A stretch of DNA of 64,000 bases from Dimorphilus gyrociliatus. Its lineage: Eukaryota > Animalia > Annelida. The stretch is from positions 1,295,713 through 1,359,712 of the forward strand of contig CAJFCJ010000004.1 of NCBI GenBank assembly GCA_904063045.1. Direction: 5' to 3'. Shown in pieces: positions 111-18,977 of this stretch. The notes beneath the pieces were generated by a model, which saw only the letters and a list, made by a program, of their open reading frames with translations, did no database searches and had not been told where the DNA came from. Numbering within the stretch: the stretch's first letter is position 1; every line of letters starts with the position of its first letter. The translations under genes were made by a program, and so were the position numbers.

Positions 111-1671
111 CTGCACCGGTGTAGCAGCTGCGCAAACAGAATTCTGATGAACAGTCCTAAGCGCGTGTATAAAATAATCAGGCCCTATAACCCATCCTAC
201 TCTCCACCCGGTTATCATCCATGTTTTCCCAGCACTTCCCATTGTTAAAGTTCTTTTCCACATATCAGGTAGAGAGGCTGATAAATGATTTCGTTTAAAA
301 CGTTTACCAACTATCTCAGAGAATATCTTTTAGTCAATAGATATTTCTCAATTTTTGTTTTTAATACAAATTCATATTTGTTGCTTTTTTTATTTACAAA
401 AAATATAGCTTACCTATCTTTATGTGTTTTTTATCATCGTATATAAGCCATTCATAAACTTCATCGCTAAAAACGATAGTGTTATATTTTTTGCATAAAT
501 CAGCTATCATTTCACATTCTTCCATGGAATAAACCTACAATGTTTATCAAAAGAAAAACTAATTAAAAGATAATAAAGTTTTTTTAAACTAGTTATATTA
601 TATCTGTATAAATTCCCGATAGAAAGAACGTACTTTGCCCAAAGGATTGTTTGGATTATTAAAGAATATGGCTTTAGTTTTATGCGAGAATTTCGAAGAC
701 AATTCCTCGTAGTCTAGACAGAACTCCGAACTTTGAAAAGATGCCCTCTCAGCATCTTCTGGTTTTTCAATCTGTATTTTTTGTTGTTAGATAAAGGTTC
801 TCTATTGAAATTAGAGTCTTTAGTAAATATTATAGTACAAACCCTTCTTAGAGGGACAAAAACTGGTACACCGCCAGCAACTCGAACCATAGGCTCGTAG
901 CAATCAAAAAAAGGTTCAATAATAATTACTTCATCTCCAGGATTAATAAGTCCTTGAACAGCACAGAATAAACCTCCATAGGCACCAACTGATATGAGAA
1001 TTTCATTCATGGGGTCAATAGGGTGATTCATAAGTGGAGAGTACAAATCGGCTAAAGCTTTGACCAATCTTGGATGTCCGTATCCTTTGAAAGTATTACA
1101 GGCTAGTATAATTCCTTACATTGAAATTTTTGTCAAATTATAATCACCTCTAGTATATTGGTTTAAAAAAGGATTATCACTCATTACAGCTTCTGCAAGA
1201 GCTTTTTTAACATATTCAGGCGCATGAAAATCTGGGAATCCCTAGATTTTATAAAAGAAAAATAATCAATATACTGTATTTTATTGAGTAGAAAAATATT
1301 CTCTTTATTTGCTTACTTGTCCTAAATTCAAAGCTTTTTCCTTAACAACTAAATTTCCGAATTCAACCCTATATTAATTTTAAATTTCATAACATATTAA
1401 CAATTTTGAACAGATTTAACAAATATAAACAATAAAAAAAGTTTATATTAAAGTCTTTTTAACAAAAACTAGCTAAAGAGACGCTTATATTAACTATTTA
1501 CTTGTCCTAAATTCAAAGCTTTGTACTGGGTACACAACTTTCCAAATTCAGCCCTTTAATAATTTTATTGAATATATTGGTTTTTGTTTTGCTTCGTAAA
1601 ATTGAAATTCTTACTCACCAAACATTTTGATCTGTCCCTTGTAATCTATCAGCCAATCCGTGGTGTGCCAT
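111..1671 (-). CDS. Kynurenine aminotransferase / glutamine transaminase K-like (class I PLP aminotransferase), paralog 1; 3' part runs off the left edge
   Basis: Exons read by hand: 1671-1619 (MAHHGLADRLQGTDQNVW), 1553-1502 or 1368-1317 (..EFG..ALNLGQ), 1241-1148 (GFPDF..NQYTRG), 1084-843 (GAYGGLF..GDEVIIIEPFFDCY), 771-634 (NNPNNPLGK), 534-414 (SDEVYEW), 277-111 (GSAGKTWMITGWRVGW, PLP lysine). All introns GT-AG and phase-compatible. Confidence 0.95.
1317..1368 (-). CDS. KYAT paralog 1 alternative exon 2b (W-VEFGNLVVKEKALNLGQ), 52 nt
   Basis: aatatag|GGTTGAATTC...TTAGGACAA|gtaagc; same length and phases as exon 2a, identical 3' 21 nt. Confidence 0.85.
1502..1553 (-). CDS. KYAT paralog 1 alternative exon 2a (W-AEFGKLCTQYKALNLGQ), 52 nt
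   Basis: attaaag|GGCTGAATTT...TTAGGACAA|gtaaat; phase 2 in, phase 0 out. Confidence 0.85.
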
Positions 1672-3123
1672 TTTCTTTTCCTTTAAATAAAAAAGTAAAG
1701 GAAATAAAACTTTAATCAGTTTGATATTATCTTTTATAAGTTAATCTAGAGACGATTTACTACAACGTTAAGTGCATATTAAGTACCAATTGCAAAATAC
1801 GAAGTAAAAAAGGAAAATAGAGGCGTTCTAGTTTAGAAGAGCAAGGTAAGACAACTTATTGTAATACAAAGTAATTCAGTTTTTAAAGGGCGCAAGGGCA
1901 ATTTCATTTGGGAACAAAATCAAGTAAGCTTTATTGTCTTGCATCAATAGTAAATCTGATCTAATAATTGACCATCCAAAAAGGTTTTGTTACTTTTCAC
2001 TTTGATATTACGTTTCTTTGACAGTGGAAAACTACTGGGACAAAGTAATTGAATGTAACAAATAACATAAAGGAAACAAACTTATTAGCTTAGAACCAAA
2101 GTGTTTAATCCACTGGAAGAAACTATTGACTAGCTTTCGGAATAAAAGTTTATTCAATTATAAAATAGTACGTTCCCCAGAATTATAGCCATTCATAACC
2201 CAAAAAAAAATAGAAAAGCCAGATAGAAAATAAATAAATAAATAAATAAACGAGAGAGAGAGAGAGAAAGAGAGAAAGAATAAAATTCTCAGTTAGATTT
2301 TTCTCTTCTGTATAAATCGTATACAGAAAAATAAAAAATCTTTCATTCACAGGGGAAAATTCGAAACACGTTAAGTTAAAAAGTCAGTACAGGAAATAGG
2401 CTTTCTTTTAAATAAGGCTCTAAAATTTGATAGATAGTATAGATTCTTTACAAATTTACTTCAATTTAATTGGAAATAATTTCGGTCAATATTAAAAACA
2501 AAAAGAAAAAACAAGAACTACTATTTTGCGTGCAAATTTTTACGGTGGGTTAACAATAAAGGAAACCTTAAATAAATTAATAGTGAATGAGTAAAATCAA
2601 TAAATAGGTTCAAATATATAATATATATCTAAATATATATATATATATGTATACTGTATATTGTTTACAACTAACTTTTCCTCATTCACTAGCGGTTTTC
2701 TATTAAATTTTACCAACCATGAATAAACTTGATACAGATTTTCTTAAAAATCCCAATTGTTTTGATTTTATTGCCGAACGAAGCATAATCTAATCTTTTT
2801 ATCATAATAATATATCTTTTAATTACAATTTTAGTTATATATGCATTTATTAGCGTATTAACGTCTGTCATCTGACATTTATTAATTTCCTCGTTTATCG
2901 CTCAGAAATTCTTCAAATAAAGTCTAGCTCATACATGGAGATATATATTTGTCATAGTTTAGATTAATTAAAATTGTATAATAAATATTATAAAATAACT
3001 ACTTTTTTAGATTATTTGATATTTATCGGCAATCTTGAGAAGAAACAATGTTCTATCTTGTTCAATAAAACCAGTTCTATAGTGAAAATACGCAGCGAGA
3101 TTATATTTTGGCAGTGACTTTAA

Positions 3124-11868: not shown

Positions 11869-13748
11869 TCATAAAATGTTATTATTATTTACAATTTTAT
11901 TATGGGATTTTAACGATATATTTGGAAATTTCATGTCTGCACTATCAAAGGGTGGTATCCATCTTCCTCTGTGTTTCTTTTTCATTCTGTACAGACAAAT
12001 GTTACTTTCTTGAATCTTTTCGTTCAAATTATTCTTCACTTTTCTGAATAATCTTTGCAGGGTCTTACGGAAGCGTTTAGTAAAAGCAATATAAAGAAAA
12101 AAGTTTATAGCAAAGTTAATGACTCTTAAAAAGTGAAAAATTTCTTTCAATATTCCAGTTTTTGACATGGAATTAAAGTGAATCCTGTGATACAGCCTAC
12201 AAAAAAATATATATTCGTTATACTATTGAATTTTAAGCATTGCACACGACTCAACTTACGTCAAAGTATGGTCAGGCATATTAAGTACAATAAAGACCAT
12301 TGAAATGAGCCATAACATCCTTGTTGTTTTCGTATGGGTTTGAAGTTTTCTTTTCCTTGAACAACTTTGAATCGACTTCAAGTTGGAGTCAATTGTTATT
12401 GCCGGCTTAAATTTCCAAATACAAAAACCAATGCTTATGTTAAATAATACAATGAGAATTCCAGGCAATATTAAACTCAAGGCCAGATCAAAGTATACCA
12501 ACAGCTGTCCAAGCATATTTGAAAACGAGCACAATAGGAGGTCATCACCATCTACTGGAGATTTAGTCAGCTTTACGTGGTATGTATTGAAACAGAGAGA
12601 AAAGAGGCAAACCGATAGTACAGTTATTGTCAGAACAATAATTCTGTGTTAGAAAAAGAAAAGATAAGAAAAAATTGTTAATATTCATTCGAAAACATCG
12701 ATTACTACAATAGACAAGATTTTTCAATGTTGAGCTAACGCTTAGTTCTTCTAAGAACAAGATAACTTAAGTAATAGATTTCTATTATTCATAGTAAGTG
12801 CTTAATACTGTATACTATTAAAAATCTTAACTTTACTGCTAAACCTATCTGGTCTATTAATGATTATTTTATAGTATCACATATCGTTCAATGTTTTGAG
12901 ATATGCCACTCGATATATATGACTCCTTATAAACAATATATAAGATATTGATATATTTTATAAGTTTATAATGAAATTTGAAGGATCATTTGAAAAATAA
13001 TCAAAAACATTGCCATCAGCCGACCATAAGGTTAAGCAAATTCCCTAAGGTTCAACTACCTCTTATATAGTGTGGCTTGGTTTGTTTACAATTTATTAAT
13101 ATTTGAAAAGGAAAATACATTGACAAAATATATACATATGTACTTATTTATATGTATATATGTATAAGAGACAAACTATATTAGGCATTTCAAACAAGAA
13201 TGAATGATTTTTTATATTATGTACATATATAATAGAAATCCTATGAGTTGGAAGTAGTTTTAAATTGAAAATTACAAAAACTTTTTGAAATAAAAAGACT
13301 TGATTACAAACCTTGATCTTTTTAATGTGCACCAAGCATTCTTTTTGAATGGATATTTAACGACAATATAACGCTCAATTGTGAAAGACACTACAATCCA
13401 AACTGATAAACAAGGTCCAACATATGTCAACCAATGCAAAAATTTGCAACTTATATTTGATTGTTTAAAAATTGGAACTGTTATATCATCCCACCAAGTC
13501 AGCATATGTGGAAGAAGTGAACAAGAATCAGCAATGGCCAGAGCTGCTAAGTAAACACTCGATGATTGAGAGTTCAAAAGCGTTCCAGTGAATATAGCCG
13601 CTGCTAGAGTATTGCAGCTTATTCCTATGAATATAACAACTGGCATGAAATAGCATTTAATTAAATTCGTAACAAACAAATTAAGAGGATCAGCCGAAGC
13701 ATTGTAGGCATAAAGAAAATAACTTCGTGTTTCGTTCGCTGCAGACAT
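11869..13748 (-). CDS. Class A peptide GPCR, FMRFamide/CNMamide/sex-peptide-receptor-like group
   Basis: Three phase-compatible exons 13748-13312, 12643-12260, 12196-11869 give 7 hydrophobic segments with YLAALAIAD (TM2), C-K-F (ECL1/TM3), FTIERY (TM3), TTRML..FIVLNMP (TM6) and NFAINFFLY..F (TM7/H8). Confidence 0.92.
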
Positions 13749-14740
13749 GTTGGTAAATGAGTGACACCCACCAAATGACGTCGCGTAATGTAAAAGTAGG
13801 TGGCGCTATTCATTTTCATTTATACCTGGGTTGTTATCCTTAGCTTACTGAATTGCAATTTAGCCTTAAGTTTCACTTTATTTTTTGTAGGATTTCGTTA
13901 ATTACATATTCTCCACCTTGACAAAAAAGAGACTTTCATTTATAAAGTAACGTAGAACTAACAACAAAGTTTACAGTATTAGTTTTTTAAGACTTATTTT
14001 TGTATTACTTTTATAATGTAACCCATCTACATCTACCTTCATTACAGTGTATTTTAGTTCATATAGCGTTTATTTGTTTATATATAAATCTCTTGCATAT
14101 TCATAAATGCATATGCTACATAGCTCGTTTAATCGTAAATACATTTGCCTATACTTTTTATTCATTGCATATCTTTCAACATAAATCTTGTTGTAATCAT
14201 TAATATATCAATCAATTTATTATCGACCTTTTGGAATAAAACTATTAACTTTTCCTAAATCTTTACTTAAACTTTCATTTGAATAAATTTCTTTAATAAT
14301 TATTTTATTATTAAAAATATTAAATAGAGTATATTCCTATTTTATCGATCACGTAACTATAATTCAAAGATTATAAATAAATCTCCTGAACGAAGATCTA
14401 TTAAAAAATCTAAGAAACAAAGGTCAAATAAATGAGGATAAAAAAGAATGTATTGTAATTCAAGACAAACGAGAAAAATACTTGTTATACTCAATTAAAT
14501 TTCCCTTTTTTTATATATAATTGTAATATTTACTTGTTTTAATAGATATTCAACATTCAACTATAGTTTATTAAAATCATAGAGTAAGTGTATACGAAAT
14601 AATAATGGATTCGAAACTTTGCTGTTTTTTTTGTTGATATAAAAAAAATCTATTAATTTACGAAGACCTTGTGAATTTTTCTTATAAAGCTTCTAATATA
14701 TACATAGAAATGTATATAAGGTTTATCTACAATGTCGTGT

Positions 14741-15199: not shown

Positions 15200-17109
15200 A
15201 TGTCTGACATTAAAATAGCAGATAGAATAAAAGGAACTGAAAAAAATGTCTGGTTTGTAATCAAGAAAAGTAAATCTACTAGATTTTTAATAGAAATTAT
15301 TTAAATTAAGGGTTGAATTCACGGAATTGGTTTCCCAAGAAAATCCAGTAGATTTGGGACGGGTATGTATTACTTTGATGATGGACTGAAATGACATGAA
15401 TAATTGTAATATTTTCACTCTTTTACAGGGTTTTCCTGATTTTAATCCTCCAGTTCACGTGAAGAATGCTTTAATAACAGCAGCCACAGATGATTCACCA
15501 TTTATTCATCAATACGCTAGAGGTAAATTAGATTATTATTGCAAAAAAATCGAATTTAGTTATTCCCATGAAAGAGTTAGCTCTTTTGATGAATTTTATT
15601 TCTATCATCTACAGTTAAGGGACATAAAAGATTAGTTACAGCCTTAGCTGAATTATATTCGCCAATTATCAATCACAACATTGATTGGGCAACTGAAATT
15701 CTTATCACAAACGGTGCCTACGGAGCGCTTCATACGACTATTCAAGGATTAATAAATCCAGGCGATGAAGTGATTATTATTGAACCATTCTTTGATTGTT
15801 ATTCGCCGATGGTTAAAGTTGCGGGGGGAACACCTATCTTTATTCCATTAAGAAAGGTCTTAAATAGTGTAAAATTATTCTTTCACTTCTATTTCTTATT
15901 TTATTCAATTTTTAGACAGAAAATACTGGAGATGTTTTTAAAAGTAGTGATTTTACTTTGGATTATAATGAATTTTCTTCAAAAATTACAAAAAAAACGA
16001 AAGCCCTGATATTTAACAACCCAAATAATCCAATTGGAAAGGTGATATAGAGGCATAATTAAGCATATACTATATCTATATATACAGTACATACTAAACT
16101 ATTAATTAACATATTCAAATATTCATTTCTTACTAAAAAGGTATATTCATTAGAAGAATGTCAACAAATTGCGAAATTATGCAAAGAGAATAATATTATT
16201 GTGATTTGCGATGAAGTATATGAATGGATAACGTACGATGATAAAAAACATATTAAAATGGGTAAATTCCTATTATAAAAATTGAATAAATTTAGATATT
16301 TTCTATACTCGCAAAATTCCATTTTTTAACTTTTAATAGCTTCTCTTCCGGATATGTTTAATAGGACATTGACACTAGGTAGTGCAGGAAAGTCATTTTC
16401 TGTAACAGGATGGAAAATTGGTTGGATCATAGGACCTGTTCATCTAATGAAACCTTGTGTAGTTGTTCATCAAAATGTTACAAACTCTTGCTCAACACCA
16501 ATGCAAGTTTGTTTTCTCTTCCTAGATTTATTGTTTTAGGATATCATTACATTTCTTATAATTCATTTAAAAATTTAGGAAGCGATCGCTATAGCTATGG
16601 AAACAGACTTGGGAAAACTAAGGAGAGACGATAGCGACTGCTATTTCAAATCTTTAGCCAAAGAGATGCAACCTAAGAGAGATTTGGCGGAAGAGTTTTT
16701 AAAAGAAACTGGATTTCATCCAGTCCGACCTGACGGTGGATATTTCATTCTCGTTAATTACACTGATGTAATGAAAAAATCATGTGTTACTCTCGATAAC
16801 TCCAATGAGGCTAATGACTATAAATTTATTAAATGGATGATACGAAATAAAGTATATGTCTCTAAAATAAAGTTATTAATATTAATAATTCATTGTTTAT
16901 TCCATAGAAAATATCGGCTATACCCGTTACTGTATTTTATAGCGAAGGGCATAAGCACCTCGGACAGAATTACATTCGCTTCTGCTTTATGAAGGTAAAA
17001 GAAAGTTTTCTATATAAAAAAAGAAGATAAAACTATAAAAAACACTTTACTTTTCCCATAGTCAAATGAAACACTTTCAAAGGCAAAAGATCTATTTAAA
17101 AAATGGTAA
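15200..17109 (+). CDS. Kynurenine aminotransferase / glutamine transaminase K-like, paralog 2 (complete)
   Basis: MSDIKIADRIKGTEKNVW|VEFTELVSQENPVDLGR|GFPDF..HQYARG|..GAYGAL..EPFFDCY|..NNPNNPIGK|..CDEVYEW|..GSAGKSFSVTGWKIGW|..PDGGYF..|..RFCFMK|SNETLSKAKDLFKKW*. Intron positions match paralog 1 over the region visible in both. Confidence 0.95.
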
Positions 17110-17482: not shown

Positions 17483-18977
17483 CTATTCTGTGATAGACAA
17501 TTCGTTCATTTCTTCATCTATAGCTTCCTGTTAACATTTAAATTAAATAATTGCTTTATACTATTTCTCTTATTAAAACAAACCATATCGCTATCTCCAT
17601 CGCTGTCAGTAGAAATTTCTTCGATAACGGCTTTGGCCTGTTCTAGTATTTTTACAATATCTATGCATCCTCTGCCCAAAGCTGATTGCAGTGGTGTATA
17701 TCCCGAAAATGTTCGACAATTTAAATCTATTGAGTGGTTTAACAATGTCTTTAATAATTCGGCTTTGCCTTCTTCAGCGGCAATATGCAATAAACTCTTT
17801 CCGCTTTTCATATCGTGTAGATTAACTGATTTTTCGAATGATGATATAGTTAATAATAACGAAACAATTTCCAAATGATTGACAGCTTCATGTAGACAAG
17901 TTTGGCCTGTTTTTATGAATAGGAAAGTATGAATATTTTAAAGAAATATCCATCTATATATATATATAGTAGATTCTAAAAAAAACTACCGTTAAAATTA
18001 TAAATATTAGGTGATTGTGGAATTTTTTGAAGTGGCTTTTCCTCGAATATCATACATTTCTCTTCATCAAGAACTAAAGGTTTAATCAATGCAGCACAGC
18101 ATTCTAAGTATCCTAATTTACAAGCCAAATGTAAAGGTGTATTTCCGTATGAGTCTCGAGCTGTAACTGAACTTCCATTTATCACCAAAAATCTAACTAG
18201 TCTCGGCAAATTTTGTAAAGTGGCTAAGTGGAGTACAGTTTGCATCTTGTTGTTGGATATACAAAAATCTTTAGGTTCAGAAGCGTAACTTATCATCGCC
18301 ACTGACAAGTGAACATTTTTATGTATAATCGATAAGTGAAGTTTTCTAGAATGAAAATAAGAAATTTGAAATCATTAGCTAATATGAAAAAATTCAAGTA
18401 CTATGCTATAAACTTACGTATCTCCATCTTCATCAGGACTATATAGGAACCGATTTATGGCCTCTCTGTTACCATTTAATTGCTTAATAATATTCCTAAA
18501 TTGCTCCAATTCCGAGTTTTTTCTCATATCATCCACTGCATTTGTTTTCCACATTTTCATGCAAGATCTTTCAAATTTTCTGTAACAAACTAGAACTTGT
18601 CTCCAATCATCTTTAAATTCAGCTTGACTTTTTATAGTTTGTGGTTGACCTACTATATCCATATTTTTACTTTCTCCAGGAAATCCGGATTTAAAATATG
18701 AACTGTTGAAGTGACTTGCCTTTGGGGAAAGGCAACTCCATGGTTTATCAATATTTTTAACAGACGACTGCGTTTCACAAAAATAGCTGCTGTCAGATGA
18801 TAAGCCTATTCCAGAGTCTGATGAGATTTCATAATCATTCCCAATACTGTGTGAAATTTTGGCAGATGCAACATTATGTTTATCCATTTCCAATCTATCC
18901 ACTATTTCACCGTTTAGAGCTGTTATAACATATGACACGGACGTTAACTTTATAAGATAATTTTTCGAATCCAACAT
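17483..18977 (-). CDS. cact: NF-kappaB inhibitor, IkB-alpha/cactus homolog
   Basis: N-terminal DSGIGLS phosphodegron, ankyrin repeats (DEDGDTKLHLSII, NNKMQTVLHLA, DSYGNTPLHLAC, NFNGQTCLHEA, SGKSLLHIAA, FSGYTPLQSA) and an acidic PEST tail (TDSDGDSDM-EAIDEEMNELSITE*); 4 exons. The exact start codon is uncertain. Confidence 0.9.

What the first reader, a model, noticed from the sequence alone, without database searches (positions are those of the whole stretch)
1317..1553. Tandem duplicated, apparently mutually exclusive exon 2 in a kynurenine aminotransferase
Seen: two 52-nt exons (1553-1502 and 1368-1317), each with AG/GT ends and the same phases, encode W-AEFGKLCTQYKALNLGQ or W-VEFGNLVVKEKALNLGQ and share an identical 3' 21 nt. 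Including both (104 nt) or neither frameshifts the ORF. The paralog at 15200 has only one copy. Known: in KAT I/III the W-x-E-F segment and the following helix form the mobile N-terminal arm that closes over the substrate, just before LGQGFPD. Inference: one gene makes two enzymes that differ only in this specificity arm, a splice switch I do not recall being described for KYAT genes.
Basis: partly seen in the sequence, partly recalled or inferred. Interest (0 to 1): 0.82.

Follow-up and report, generated by a model that had tools for sequence, protein, structure and literature searches.

The report
Duplicated exon 2 in worm aminotransferase
A kynurenine aminotransferase gene of the tiny marine worm Dimorphilus gyrociliatus really does carry two tandem copies of the 52-base exon that encodes the enzyme's substrate-gating arm, but only the second copy has been seen in messenger RNA, so the proposed two-enzyme splice switch is plausible and still unproven.

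Summary
Exons 2a (1553-1502) and 2b (1368-1317) are each 52 nt, have AG/GT ends and the same phase, and match at 40/52 nt, including the last 21 nt. Using one keeps the reading frame. Using both or neither gives a stop at codon 37.

The gene is D. gyrociliatus DgyrCDS2916/2917, a KAT I/III-type enzyme. Exon 2 encodes residues 18-35, the sliding N-terminal arm that carries the invariant Trp18.

The duplication is not an assembly artefact. An independent contig from a related species has both copies in tandem. It is lineage-specific: four other annelids and a limpet have one copy.

Evidence that both exons are used is mixed:
- Both annotated isoforms and a relative's transcript use 2b. No 2a transcript was seen, but my reads evidence over this region was blind.
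- In the distant relative, 2a has stops in all three frames.
- Differences between the two 2a orthologues cluster at synonymous sites.
- D. gyrociliatus 2a has had 0-1 amino-acid changes and keeps canonical residues (Lys23, Tyr28) that 2b lost.

My estimate is about 55% that 2a is a real minor or conditional alternative exon and about 33% that it is an unused relic.

This scan had already noted the same gene: a second duplicated exon (7a/7b, catalytic lysine) lies just beyond the window start.

The parts
2718..2786 (-). Alternative upstream first exon. It encodes MLRSAIKSKQLGFLRKSVSSLFM, which looks like a mitochondrial presequence. GT donor.
   Evidence: Present in annotated isoform DgyrCDS2917 (P0378). 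Coordinates.
1619..1680 (-). Exon 1. The ATG of the short form is at 1671 and the acceptor for the upstream exon is at 1680. It ends with TG, the first two bases of the Trp18 codon.
   Evidence: P0282/P0378.
1502..1553 (-). Exon 2a, 52 nt, AG/GT ends. Encodes (W)AEFGKLCTQYKALNLGQ. No transcript containing it has been observed.
   Evidence: Its orthologue in L003:22-73 has an in-frame TGA. Substitution pattern.
1369..1501 (-). Intron between 2a and 2b, 133 nt. That is long enough to be spliced out, so nothing steric prevents double inclusion.
   Evidence: The median D. gyrociliatus intron is 66 bp (PMC7854359).
1317..1368 (-). Exon 2b, 52 nt, AG/GT ends. Encodes (W)VEFGNLVVKEKALNLGQ. This is the exon used in both annotated isoforms.
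   Evidence: 92% nt identity to L003:270-321. A relative's transcript joins exon 3 to it.
1148..1241 (-). Exon 3 (GFPDF...QYTRG), the common acceptor for either exon 2 copy.
843..1084 (-). Exon 4, the conserved core. I used it for the family assignment.
634..771 (-). Exon 5.
   Evidence: junctions.
414..534 (-). Exon 6.
   Evidence: junctions.
111..277 (-). Exon 7a, 167 nt, with the SAGK catalytic-lysine motif. It is the first copy of a second duplicated exon. Copy 7b lies outside the window at L001:1136-1302.
   Evidence: An X7 contig shows exon 6 spliced to 7a.
15311..15362 (+). The single exon 2 of the neighbouring paralogue (WVEFTELVSQENPVDLGR).

Best explanation
Exon 2 of one of the two D. 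gyrociliatus KAT I/III genes was duplicated in tandem within the dinophilid lineage, together with its splice sites (a 70-nt unit).

Each copy is 52 nt, which is not a multiple of three. Only mRNAs with exactly one copy are therefore translatable. Double inclusion or double skipping puts a stop at codon 37, and such mRNAs would presumably be removed by nonsense-mediated decay. This decay step is inferred, not shown.

Exon 2b is the default exon. Exon 2a is an intact alternative that has been kept as coding sequence and is probably used at a low level or under particular conditions.

The two products would differ at six positions of the sliding N-terminal helix: 19 A/V, 23 K/N, 25 C/V, 26 T/V, 27 Q/K and 28 Y/E. 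Trp18, Glu20, Phe21, Leu24 and KALNLGQ stay constant. The switch would therefore retune the lid over the substrate pocket and leave the catalytic core unchanged.

The 25 identical nt at the 3' end of both copies are best read as a recent gene-conversion tract.
For: - Anatomy and frame logic.
- Family and residue mapping: the D. gyrociliatus numbering equals human KAT I numbering for residues 6-52, so exon 2 covers residues 18-35. That arm slides over the active site with invariant Trp18 (PMC6400995).
- The duplication is real and old: both copies are present in tandem in an independent contig of a relative. In the neighbouring exons 3-6 that relative differs at a proportion of 0.67 of synonymous sites (pS) and 0.05 of nonsynonymous sites (pN).
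- 2a evolved as coding sequence. Of the 17 differences between the two 2a orthologues, 10 fall at third codon positions (p=0.027). pS is 0.93 against pN 0.17 (Fisher p=4e-5).
- Polarising with 2b as outgroup puts 10 changes on the relative's branch, including the stop. Only 2 changes, both synonymous, fall on the D. gyrociliatus branch, and 5 are ambiguous.
- D. gyrociliatus 2a keeps Lys23, Gln27 and Tyr28 as in Mytilus, Owenia, Helobdella and Aedes orthologues, while 2b has Asn23, Lys27 and Glu28.
- The same gene does use a second duplicated exon: exon 6 is spliced to 7a in an X7 contig.
Against: - No transcript with 2a was seen. Both annotated isoforms (CAD5113751.1, CAD5113750.1) use 2b, and their 90% cluster has no other member.
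- An N-terminal search of the 15-billion-protein collection found no 2a form.
- The relative's abundant transcript contig lies on 2b.
- In the L003 species 2a has stops in all three frames and LGQ has become SGK, so it is dispensable there.
- The branch-specific test is weak if only the two unambiguous synonymous changes are counted: P(at most 1 nonsynonymous change) is 0.11, falling to 0.01-0.03 with 3-4 synonymous changes.
- Gene conversion from 2b could have refreshed the 3' 21 nt whether or not 2a functions.
Confidence: 0.55

Rival explanations
1. Exon 2a is an unused relic of the duplication, a pseudo-exon that has died or is dying. Only 2b is ever spliced into productive mRNA, and the gene makes one arm variant.
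For: Only 2b appears in both public gene models and in the relative's transcript. The orthologous 2a in the L003 species has an in-frame TGA and has lost the conserved LGQ. Overall 2a identity between the species (67%) is no higher than the aligned introns (50-71%). A 17-codon open frame and AG/GT ends can persist by chance for a while, and a recent conversion tract (25 identical nt) could have repaired its 3' half.
Against: Differences in 2a are concentrated at synonymous sites. The D. gyrociliatus branch has 0-1 amino-acid changes. 2a-specific residues (Ala19, Lys23, Gln27) are shared by both species' 2a copies and so did not come from 2b. Tyr28 and Lys23 match distant orthologues. The assembler behind Logan contigs may merge two equal-length 52-nt alternatives into the more abundant one. 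Annotation pipelines also rarely report minor isoforms. Not seeing 2a therefore carries little weight.
Confidence: 0.33
2. Exon 2a acts as a regulatory 'poison' exon. Its inclusion next to 2b shifts the frame and sends the mRNA to decay, which tunes enzyme level and does not make a second enzyme.
For: Double inclusion gives a stop at codon 37. The 133-nt intron between the copies can be spliced. In the L003 species the AG, the GTAAAT donor and about 15 nt after it are kept although the coding sense is lost.
Against: No 2a-2b junction was seen. A poison exon needs no open frame or canonical residues, yet D. gyrociliatus 2a keeps both.
Confidence: 0.08
3. The duplication is an assembly artefact or a collapsed allele.
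For: None found.
Against: The copies differ at 12 of 52 nt and sit in unlike introns. An independent contig from another species shows the same tandem arrangement.
Confidence: 0.01

Closest known systems
Mutually exclusive exon pairs made by tandem exon duplication (e.g. insect myosin heavy chain, PMC2257972; also 14-3-3 zeta and Dscam, recalled from memory)
   Same: Adjacent homologous exons of identical length and phase, each with its own AG/GT. Joint inclusion breaks the frame. The variable segment maps to a functional surface of the protein.
   Different: Only two copies. Use of one copy (2a) is not shown. No supported docking/selector RNA structure: the fold z-score is 0.36 and the AU-rich inverted repeats are at chance level. 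The pair is restricted to dinophilid worms, and one copy has decayed in a relative.
Kynurenine aminotransferase I/III (KYAT1/KYAT3; solved structures 1W7L, 3FVS, 2ZJG, 1YIY)
   Same: 72-77% identity over the core exon. The N-terminal arm has identical numbering, with Trp18, LGQGFPDF and the SAGK lysine. There is an alternative first exon with a presequence-like peptide, as reported for KAT genes.
   Different: The known isoform diversity of KAT genes comes from alternative first exons or targeting peptides (e.g. Pteromalus, PMC13651363). I found no report of alternative arm exons.
Exon 7a/7b pair of the same gene
   Same: Same gene and same principle: a 167-nt exon, not a multiple of three, duplicated in tandem. 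Both pairs contribute to the ligand pocket.
   Different: 7a and 7b are far more diverged (93/167 nt, 25/55 aa) and 7a is seen spliced to exon 6. The 2a/2b pair is short, 77% identical, partly homogenised, and lacks RNA support for 2a.

Membership tests
KAT I/III-type class I aminotransferase (Pfam PF00155) | Sequence similarity to solved KAT I/III structures across the core | tested here: met
   Exon 4 against 2ZJG, 5VEH, 1YIY and 1W7L gives E 1e-31 to 4e-26. The N-terminal 110 aa give E 1e-34 to 2e-25. PF00155 is recorded for P0282.
KAT I/III-type class I aminotransferase (Pfam PF00155) | Invariant Trp of the N-terminal arm followed by LGQGFPD | tested here: met
   Trp18 is a split codon (TG from exon 1, G from exon 2a or 2b). 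NLGQ|GFPDF is present with either exon.
KAT I/III-type class I aminotransferase (Pfam PF00155) | PLP-binding lysine in the SAGK motif | tested here: met
   Both 7a (GSAGKTW) and 7b (SSAGKAF) have it.
KAT I/III-type class I aminotransferase (Pfam PF00155) | Transaminase activity on kynurenine, glutamine or Cys-conjugates | not testable with these tools
   Needs recombinant enzyme assays.
Mutually exclusive exon cluster | Neighbouring homologous exons of the same length and phase, each with canonical splice sites | tested here: met
   52 nt each, 40/52 identical, AG/GT ends, phase 2 in and phase 0 out.
Mutually exclusive exon cluster | Joint inclusion or joint skipping is incompatible with the reading frame | tested here: met
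   The first stop falls at codon 37 in both cases.
Mutually exclusive exon cluster | Transcripts exist with each exon alone | tested here: inconclusive
   2b is supported by two annotated isoforms and a relative's transcript. 2a was never seen.
Mutually exclusive exon cluster | Both copies kept under purifying selection in related species | tested here: inconclusive
   2b: 92% nt identity, pN 0.02. 2a: dead in the L003 species (stops in all frames), but its substitutions are biased to synonymous sites and the D. gyrociliatus copy is intact.
Mutually exclusive exon cluster | A mechanism that enforces exclusivity beyond the frame (steric block or competing RNA pairings) | tested here: not met
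   The intron between the copies is 133 nt, twice the species median. The fold of 1242-1618 is no more stable than shuffles (z 0.36). The inverted repeats are AU-rich and weak.

The most novel reading that the evidence does not exclude
One compact-genome annelid gene carries two separate alternative-exon modules, the substrate-gating arm (2a/2b) and the catalytic-lysine/pocket exon (7a/7b). These may be chosen in a coordinated way (for example 2a with 7a and 2b with 7b). A single locus would then make two enzymes with differently built substrate pockets, or mixed dimers. That would stand in for the KAT paralogues other animals keep as separate genes.
Probability: 0.2. Interest if true: 0.65.

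Novelty: new member of a known kind. Interest (0 to 1): 0.42.

Why it matters
If 2a is used, this would be the first case I can find of a kynurenine aminotransferase changing its substrate-gating arm by splicing, where other animals use separate paralogues. It would be a natural experiment on which arm residues set specificity: only six positions differ, around the invariant Trp18. It would also show how a miniaturised genome with just two KAT I/III genes can regain enzyme diversity.

If 2a is unused, the locus is still a neat snapshot of the birth and death of an alternative exon. The copy is intact in one species and has stops in a relative.

Either way the practical effect is small: the public gene models lack 2a and 7a, and they stop early at the 3' end.

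Tried and rejected
1. Reads. The look-up of sequencing runs gave only one same-species run (X7). Read laying showed no X7 contig over exons 1-6 or the exon 2 region, although the run holds 46% of the stretch's words. The tool warns that contigs resembling human DNA are dropped silently.

2. Proteins. The exon 4 word search gave only fragments. The representative search gave distant full-length proteins. A profile of P0122 plus exon rows given by reference (A2) found the D. gyrociliatus models. An N-terminal search with P0282 found no closer relative than 66% identity and no 2a form.

I made no search with a joined 2a-containing protein model or with exon-junction words. Joined translations were computed only inside a script, to check frames.

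4. Exact exon-only patterns for 2a and 2b in JGI metagenome contigs gave 0 hits each. The 2b control was also blank, so this says nothing.

5. Competing RNA structure. The fold of 1242-1618 has z 0.36. Inverted repeats I1 and I3 could pair intron 1 with the introns after 2a or 2b, but they are AU-rich and unremarkable. I rejected this as evidence.

6. I first read 2a's 67% identity as 'intron-like, hence dead'. I revised this after the codon-position and pN/pS analysis.

7. A second look-up on L003's other open reading frame returned only the same contig.

8. Assembly artefact was rejected (L003).

Full report
WHAT IS THERE

On the minus strand of the window lies a multi-exon gene.
- The short-form ATG is at 1671, and exon 1 ends at 1619 with TG|GTGAGT.
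- Two 52-nt segments follow, at 1553-1502 (2a) and 1368-1317 (2b). Each is preceded by AG and followed by GT.
- The remaining exons are at 1241-1148, 1084-843, 771-634, 534-414 and 277-111.
- 2a and 2b match at 40 of 52 nt. The last 21 nt are identical, or 25 if the donor's GTAA is counted.
- The repeat unit found by the repeat tool is 70 nt at 80% identity and spans both splice sites. The introns around the copies are otherwise unlike.
- With either copy the frame is open through exon 7. With both or neither, the first stop is at codon 37.

WHOSE GENE AND WHICH FAMILY

I checked this three ways.
- G000 has 349 contigs and 77.9 Mb.
- The genome paper reports about 350 scaffolds, a 73.8-Mb genome and a median intron of 66 bp (PMC7854359).
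- Two NCBI proteins match the window's exons residue for residue: DgyrCDS2916 (P0282, CAD5113751.1) and DgyrCDS2917 (P0378, CAD5113750.1).

Exon 4 matches solved KAT III, Aedes KAT and human KAT I at E 1e-31 to 4e-26.

The N-terminal 110 residues align to human KAT I without offset (query 6 = chain 6). Exon 2 therefore encodes residues 18-35, and Trp18 is the split codon TG|G.

[quoted passage not shown] It also says the invariant Trp18 (Trp54 in mouse KAT III) entraps the ligand (PMC6400995).

The two versions differ at positions 19 (A/V), 23 (K/N), 25 (C/V), 26 (T/V), 27 (Q/K) and 28 (Y/E).

IS THE DUPLICATION REAL, AND HOW OLD IS IT?

A word search with exon 4 returned a fragment (P0008, 92% identical over the part it covers) from a Logan contig of run SRR23372231. 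The 1328-nt contig (L003) is unspliced DNA-like sequence of a related species. It covers 2a through exon 6 and has both copies in tandem: 2a at L003:22-73 and 2b at L003:270-321. This rules out an assembly artefact and places the duplication before the split of the two species. That split is deep: in exons 3-6 the proportion of synonymous sites that differ (pS) is 0.67 and of nonsynonymous sites (pN) is 0.05.

The duplication is not a general spiralian feature. In the genomic loci of Owenia, Capitella, Helobdella, Paralvinella and Lottia, a sensitive tblastn finds one arm exon and one lysine exon. The same scan finds both copies of both exons in D. gyrociliatus.

The neighbouring paralogue has a single exon 2 at 15311-15362. 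The genome has no third KAT I/III gene.

IS 2a USED?

Evidence against:
- Both annotated isoforms use 2b (and 7b). They differ only by an upstream first exon.
- Their 90% cluster has no other member.
- An N-terminal search of the protein collection found nothing closer than 66% identity.
- In reads, a 1442-nt spliced contig of a closer relative (X1, 88-96% exon identity) joins exon 3 to 2b and exon 6 to 7b.
- The same-species run X7 showed no contigs at all over exons 1-6, so the decisive comparison could not be made.
- In L003, 2a reads WAEFSKL*NQPKALNSGK. It has stops in all three frames, although its length, AG and GTAAAT donor are kept.

Evidence for:
- Of the 17 differences between the two 2a orthologues, 10 are at third codon positions (p=0.027).
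- pS is 0.93 against pN 0.17 (Fisher p=4e-5). 2a therefore evolved as coding sequence for most of the time since the split.
- Polarising with 2b as outgroup puts 10 changes on the relative's branch, including Gly to Ser, Cys to stop, Leu to Ser and Gln to Lys. Only 2 changes, both synonymous, fall on the D. gyrociliatus branch. Five are ambiguous.
- A simple neutral simulation gives P(at most 1 nonsynonymous change) of 0.11, 0.03 or 0.01 if 2, 3 or 4 synonymous changes are assigned to that branch. This support is suggestive and not strong.
- Ala19, Lys23 and Gln27 are shared by both species' 2a copies, so they did not come from 2b by conversion.
- D. gyrociliatus 2a keeps Lys23 and Tyr28 as in Mytilus (WVEFGKLAVDYKALNLGQ), Owenia, Helobdella and Aedes. 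The expressed 2b has Asn23 and Glu28.
- A dead exon would not be expected to be the more canonical of the two after such a long time.

OTHER POINTS

- Exon 2b is unusually conserved even at synonymous sites: pS 0.28 against 0.67 in its neighbours. This hints at a nucleotide-level constraint or at conversion.
- The 25 identical nt shared by 2a and 2b in D. gyrociliatus differ at 6 of 21 positions between the relative's copies. A recent conversion tract is the simplest reading.
- I found no evidence for competing RNA pairings. The 133-nt intron between the copies is long enough to be spliced. The only enforcement of exclusivity I can show is the reading frame. Removal of the wrong products by nonsense-mediated decay is inferred.

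VERDICT

The duplication is real, lineage-specific and correctly described. The reading 'two enzymes from one gene differing in the specificity arm' is plausible. It has evolutionary support but no RNA support. I put it at about 0.55, an unused relic at about 0.33, and a poison-exon role at about 0.08.

In kind, this is another mutually exclusive exon pair made by tandem exon duplication. It is new for this gene family as far as the paper library shows.

The scan had already flagged this gene on overlapping DNA (s1-080251, s1-081643, s1-081101).

That step is left out and is named under Tried and rejected.

Noticed in passing
window 111-277 and L001:1136-1302 (364 to 198 nt before the window start): A second duplicated exon in the same gene. 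7a and 7b are each 167 nt with AG/GT ends. Both carry the SAGK catalytic lysine, but they share only 93/167 nt and 25/55 aa, and a 308-nt intron separates them. In the same-species run X7, the abundant contig (depth 1023) runs from 7b into the downstream exons. A contig at depth 38 has exon 6 spliced to 7a and then runs unspliced through the 7a-7b intron into 7b.
   Followed up: partly
window 2718-2786 (minus strand): An upstream alternative first exon encodes MLRSAIKSKQLGFLRKSVSSLFM, which looks like a mitochondrial presequence. It is spliced to an acceptor at 1680 and is present in annotated isoform DgyrCDS2917 but not DgyrCDS2916.
   Followed up: partly
L001:457-1070: Both public protein models end in ...WMIANKVFLIR, which reads into the intron after the exon at L001:796-1070. 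Transcript contigs of X7 and X1 splice on through two more exons (junctions 796/723 and 637/569). The annotated CDS therefore appears to lack its true C-terminus.
   Followed up: partly
window 1317-1368: Exon 2b is far more conserved at synonymous sites (pS 0.28) than exons 3-6 (pS 0.67) between D. gyrociliatus and the L003 species. This hints at a nucleotide-level constraint, such as splicing signals, or at conversion.
   Followed up: no
L001:1524-1754: Runs labelled as other organisms (X1, X3) hold short low-depth contigs about 99% identical to exon 7a plus its downstream intron. They carry a 10-nt deletion or a break near L001:1556. X1's own abundant transcript is only 88-96% identical. A coral metatranscriptome (X6) holds 99% identical spliced pieces. 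This looks like a D. gyrociliatus-like worm present as a contaminant or aquarium guest in other samples.
   Followed up: no
window 1258-1273, 1418-1437, 1563-1588: An AU-rich segment of intron 1 is complementary both to a segment in the 2a-2b intron (20 nt, 85%) and to one in the 2b-exon 3 intron (16 nt, 81%). The layout resembles a docking/selector arrangement, but the fold is no better than shuffles (z 0.36).
   Followed up: partly
window 13320-13760 (minus strand) and 17540-17900 (minus strand): Between and beside the two divergently oriented KAT paralogues lie a receptor-like open reading frame with hydrophobic segments (MSAANETRSYF...) and an ankyrin-repeat-like coding stretch. I did not examine them.
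   Followed up: no
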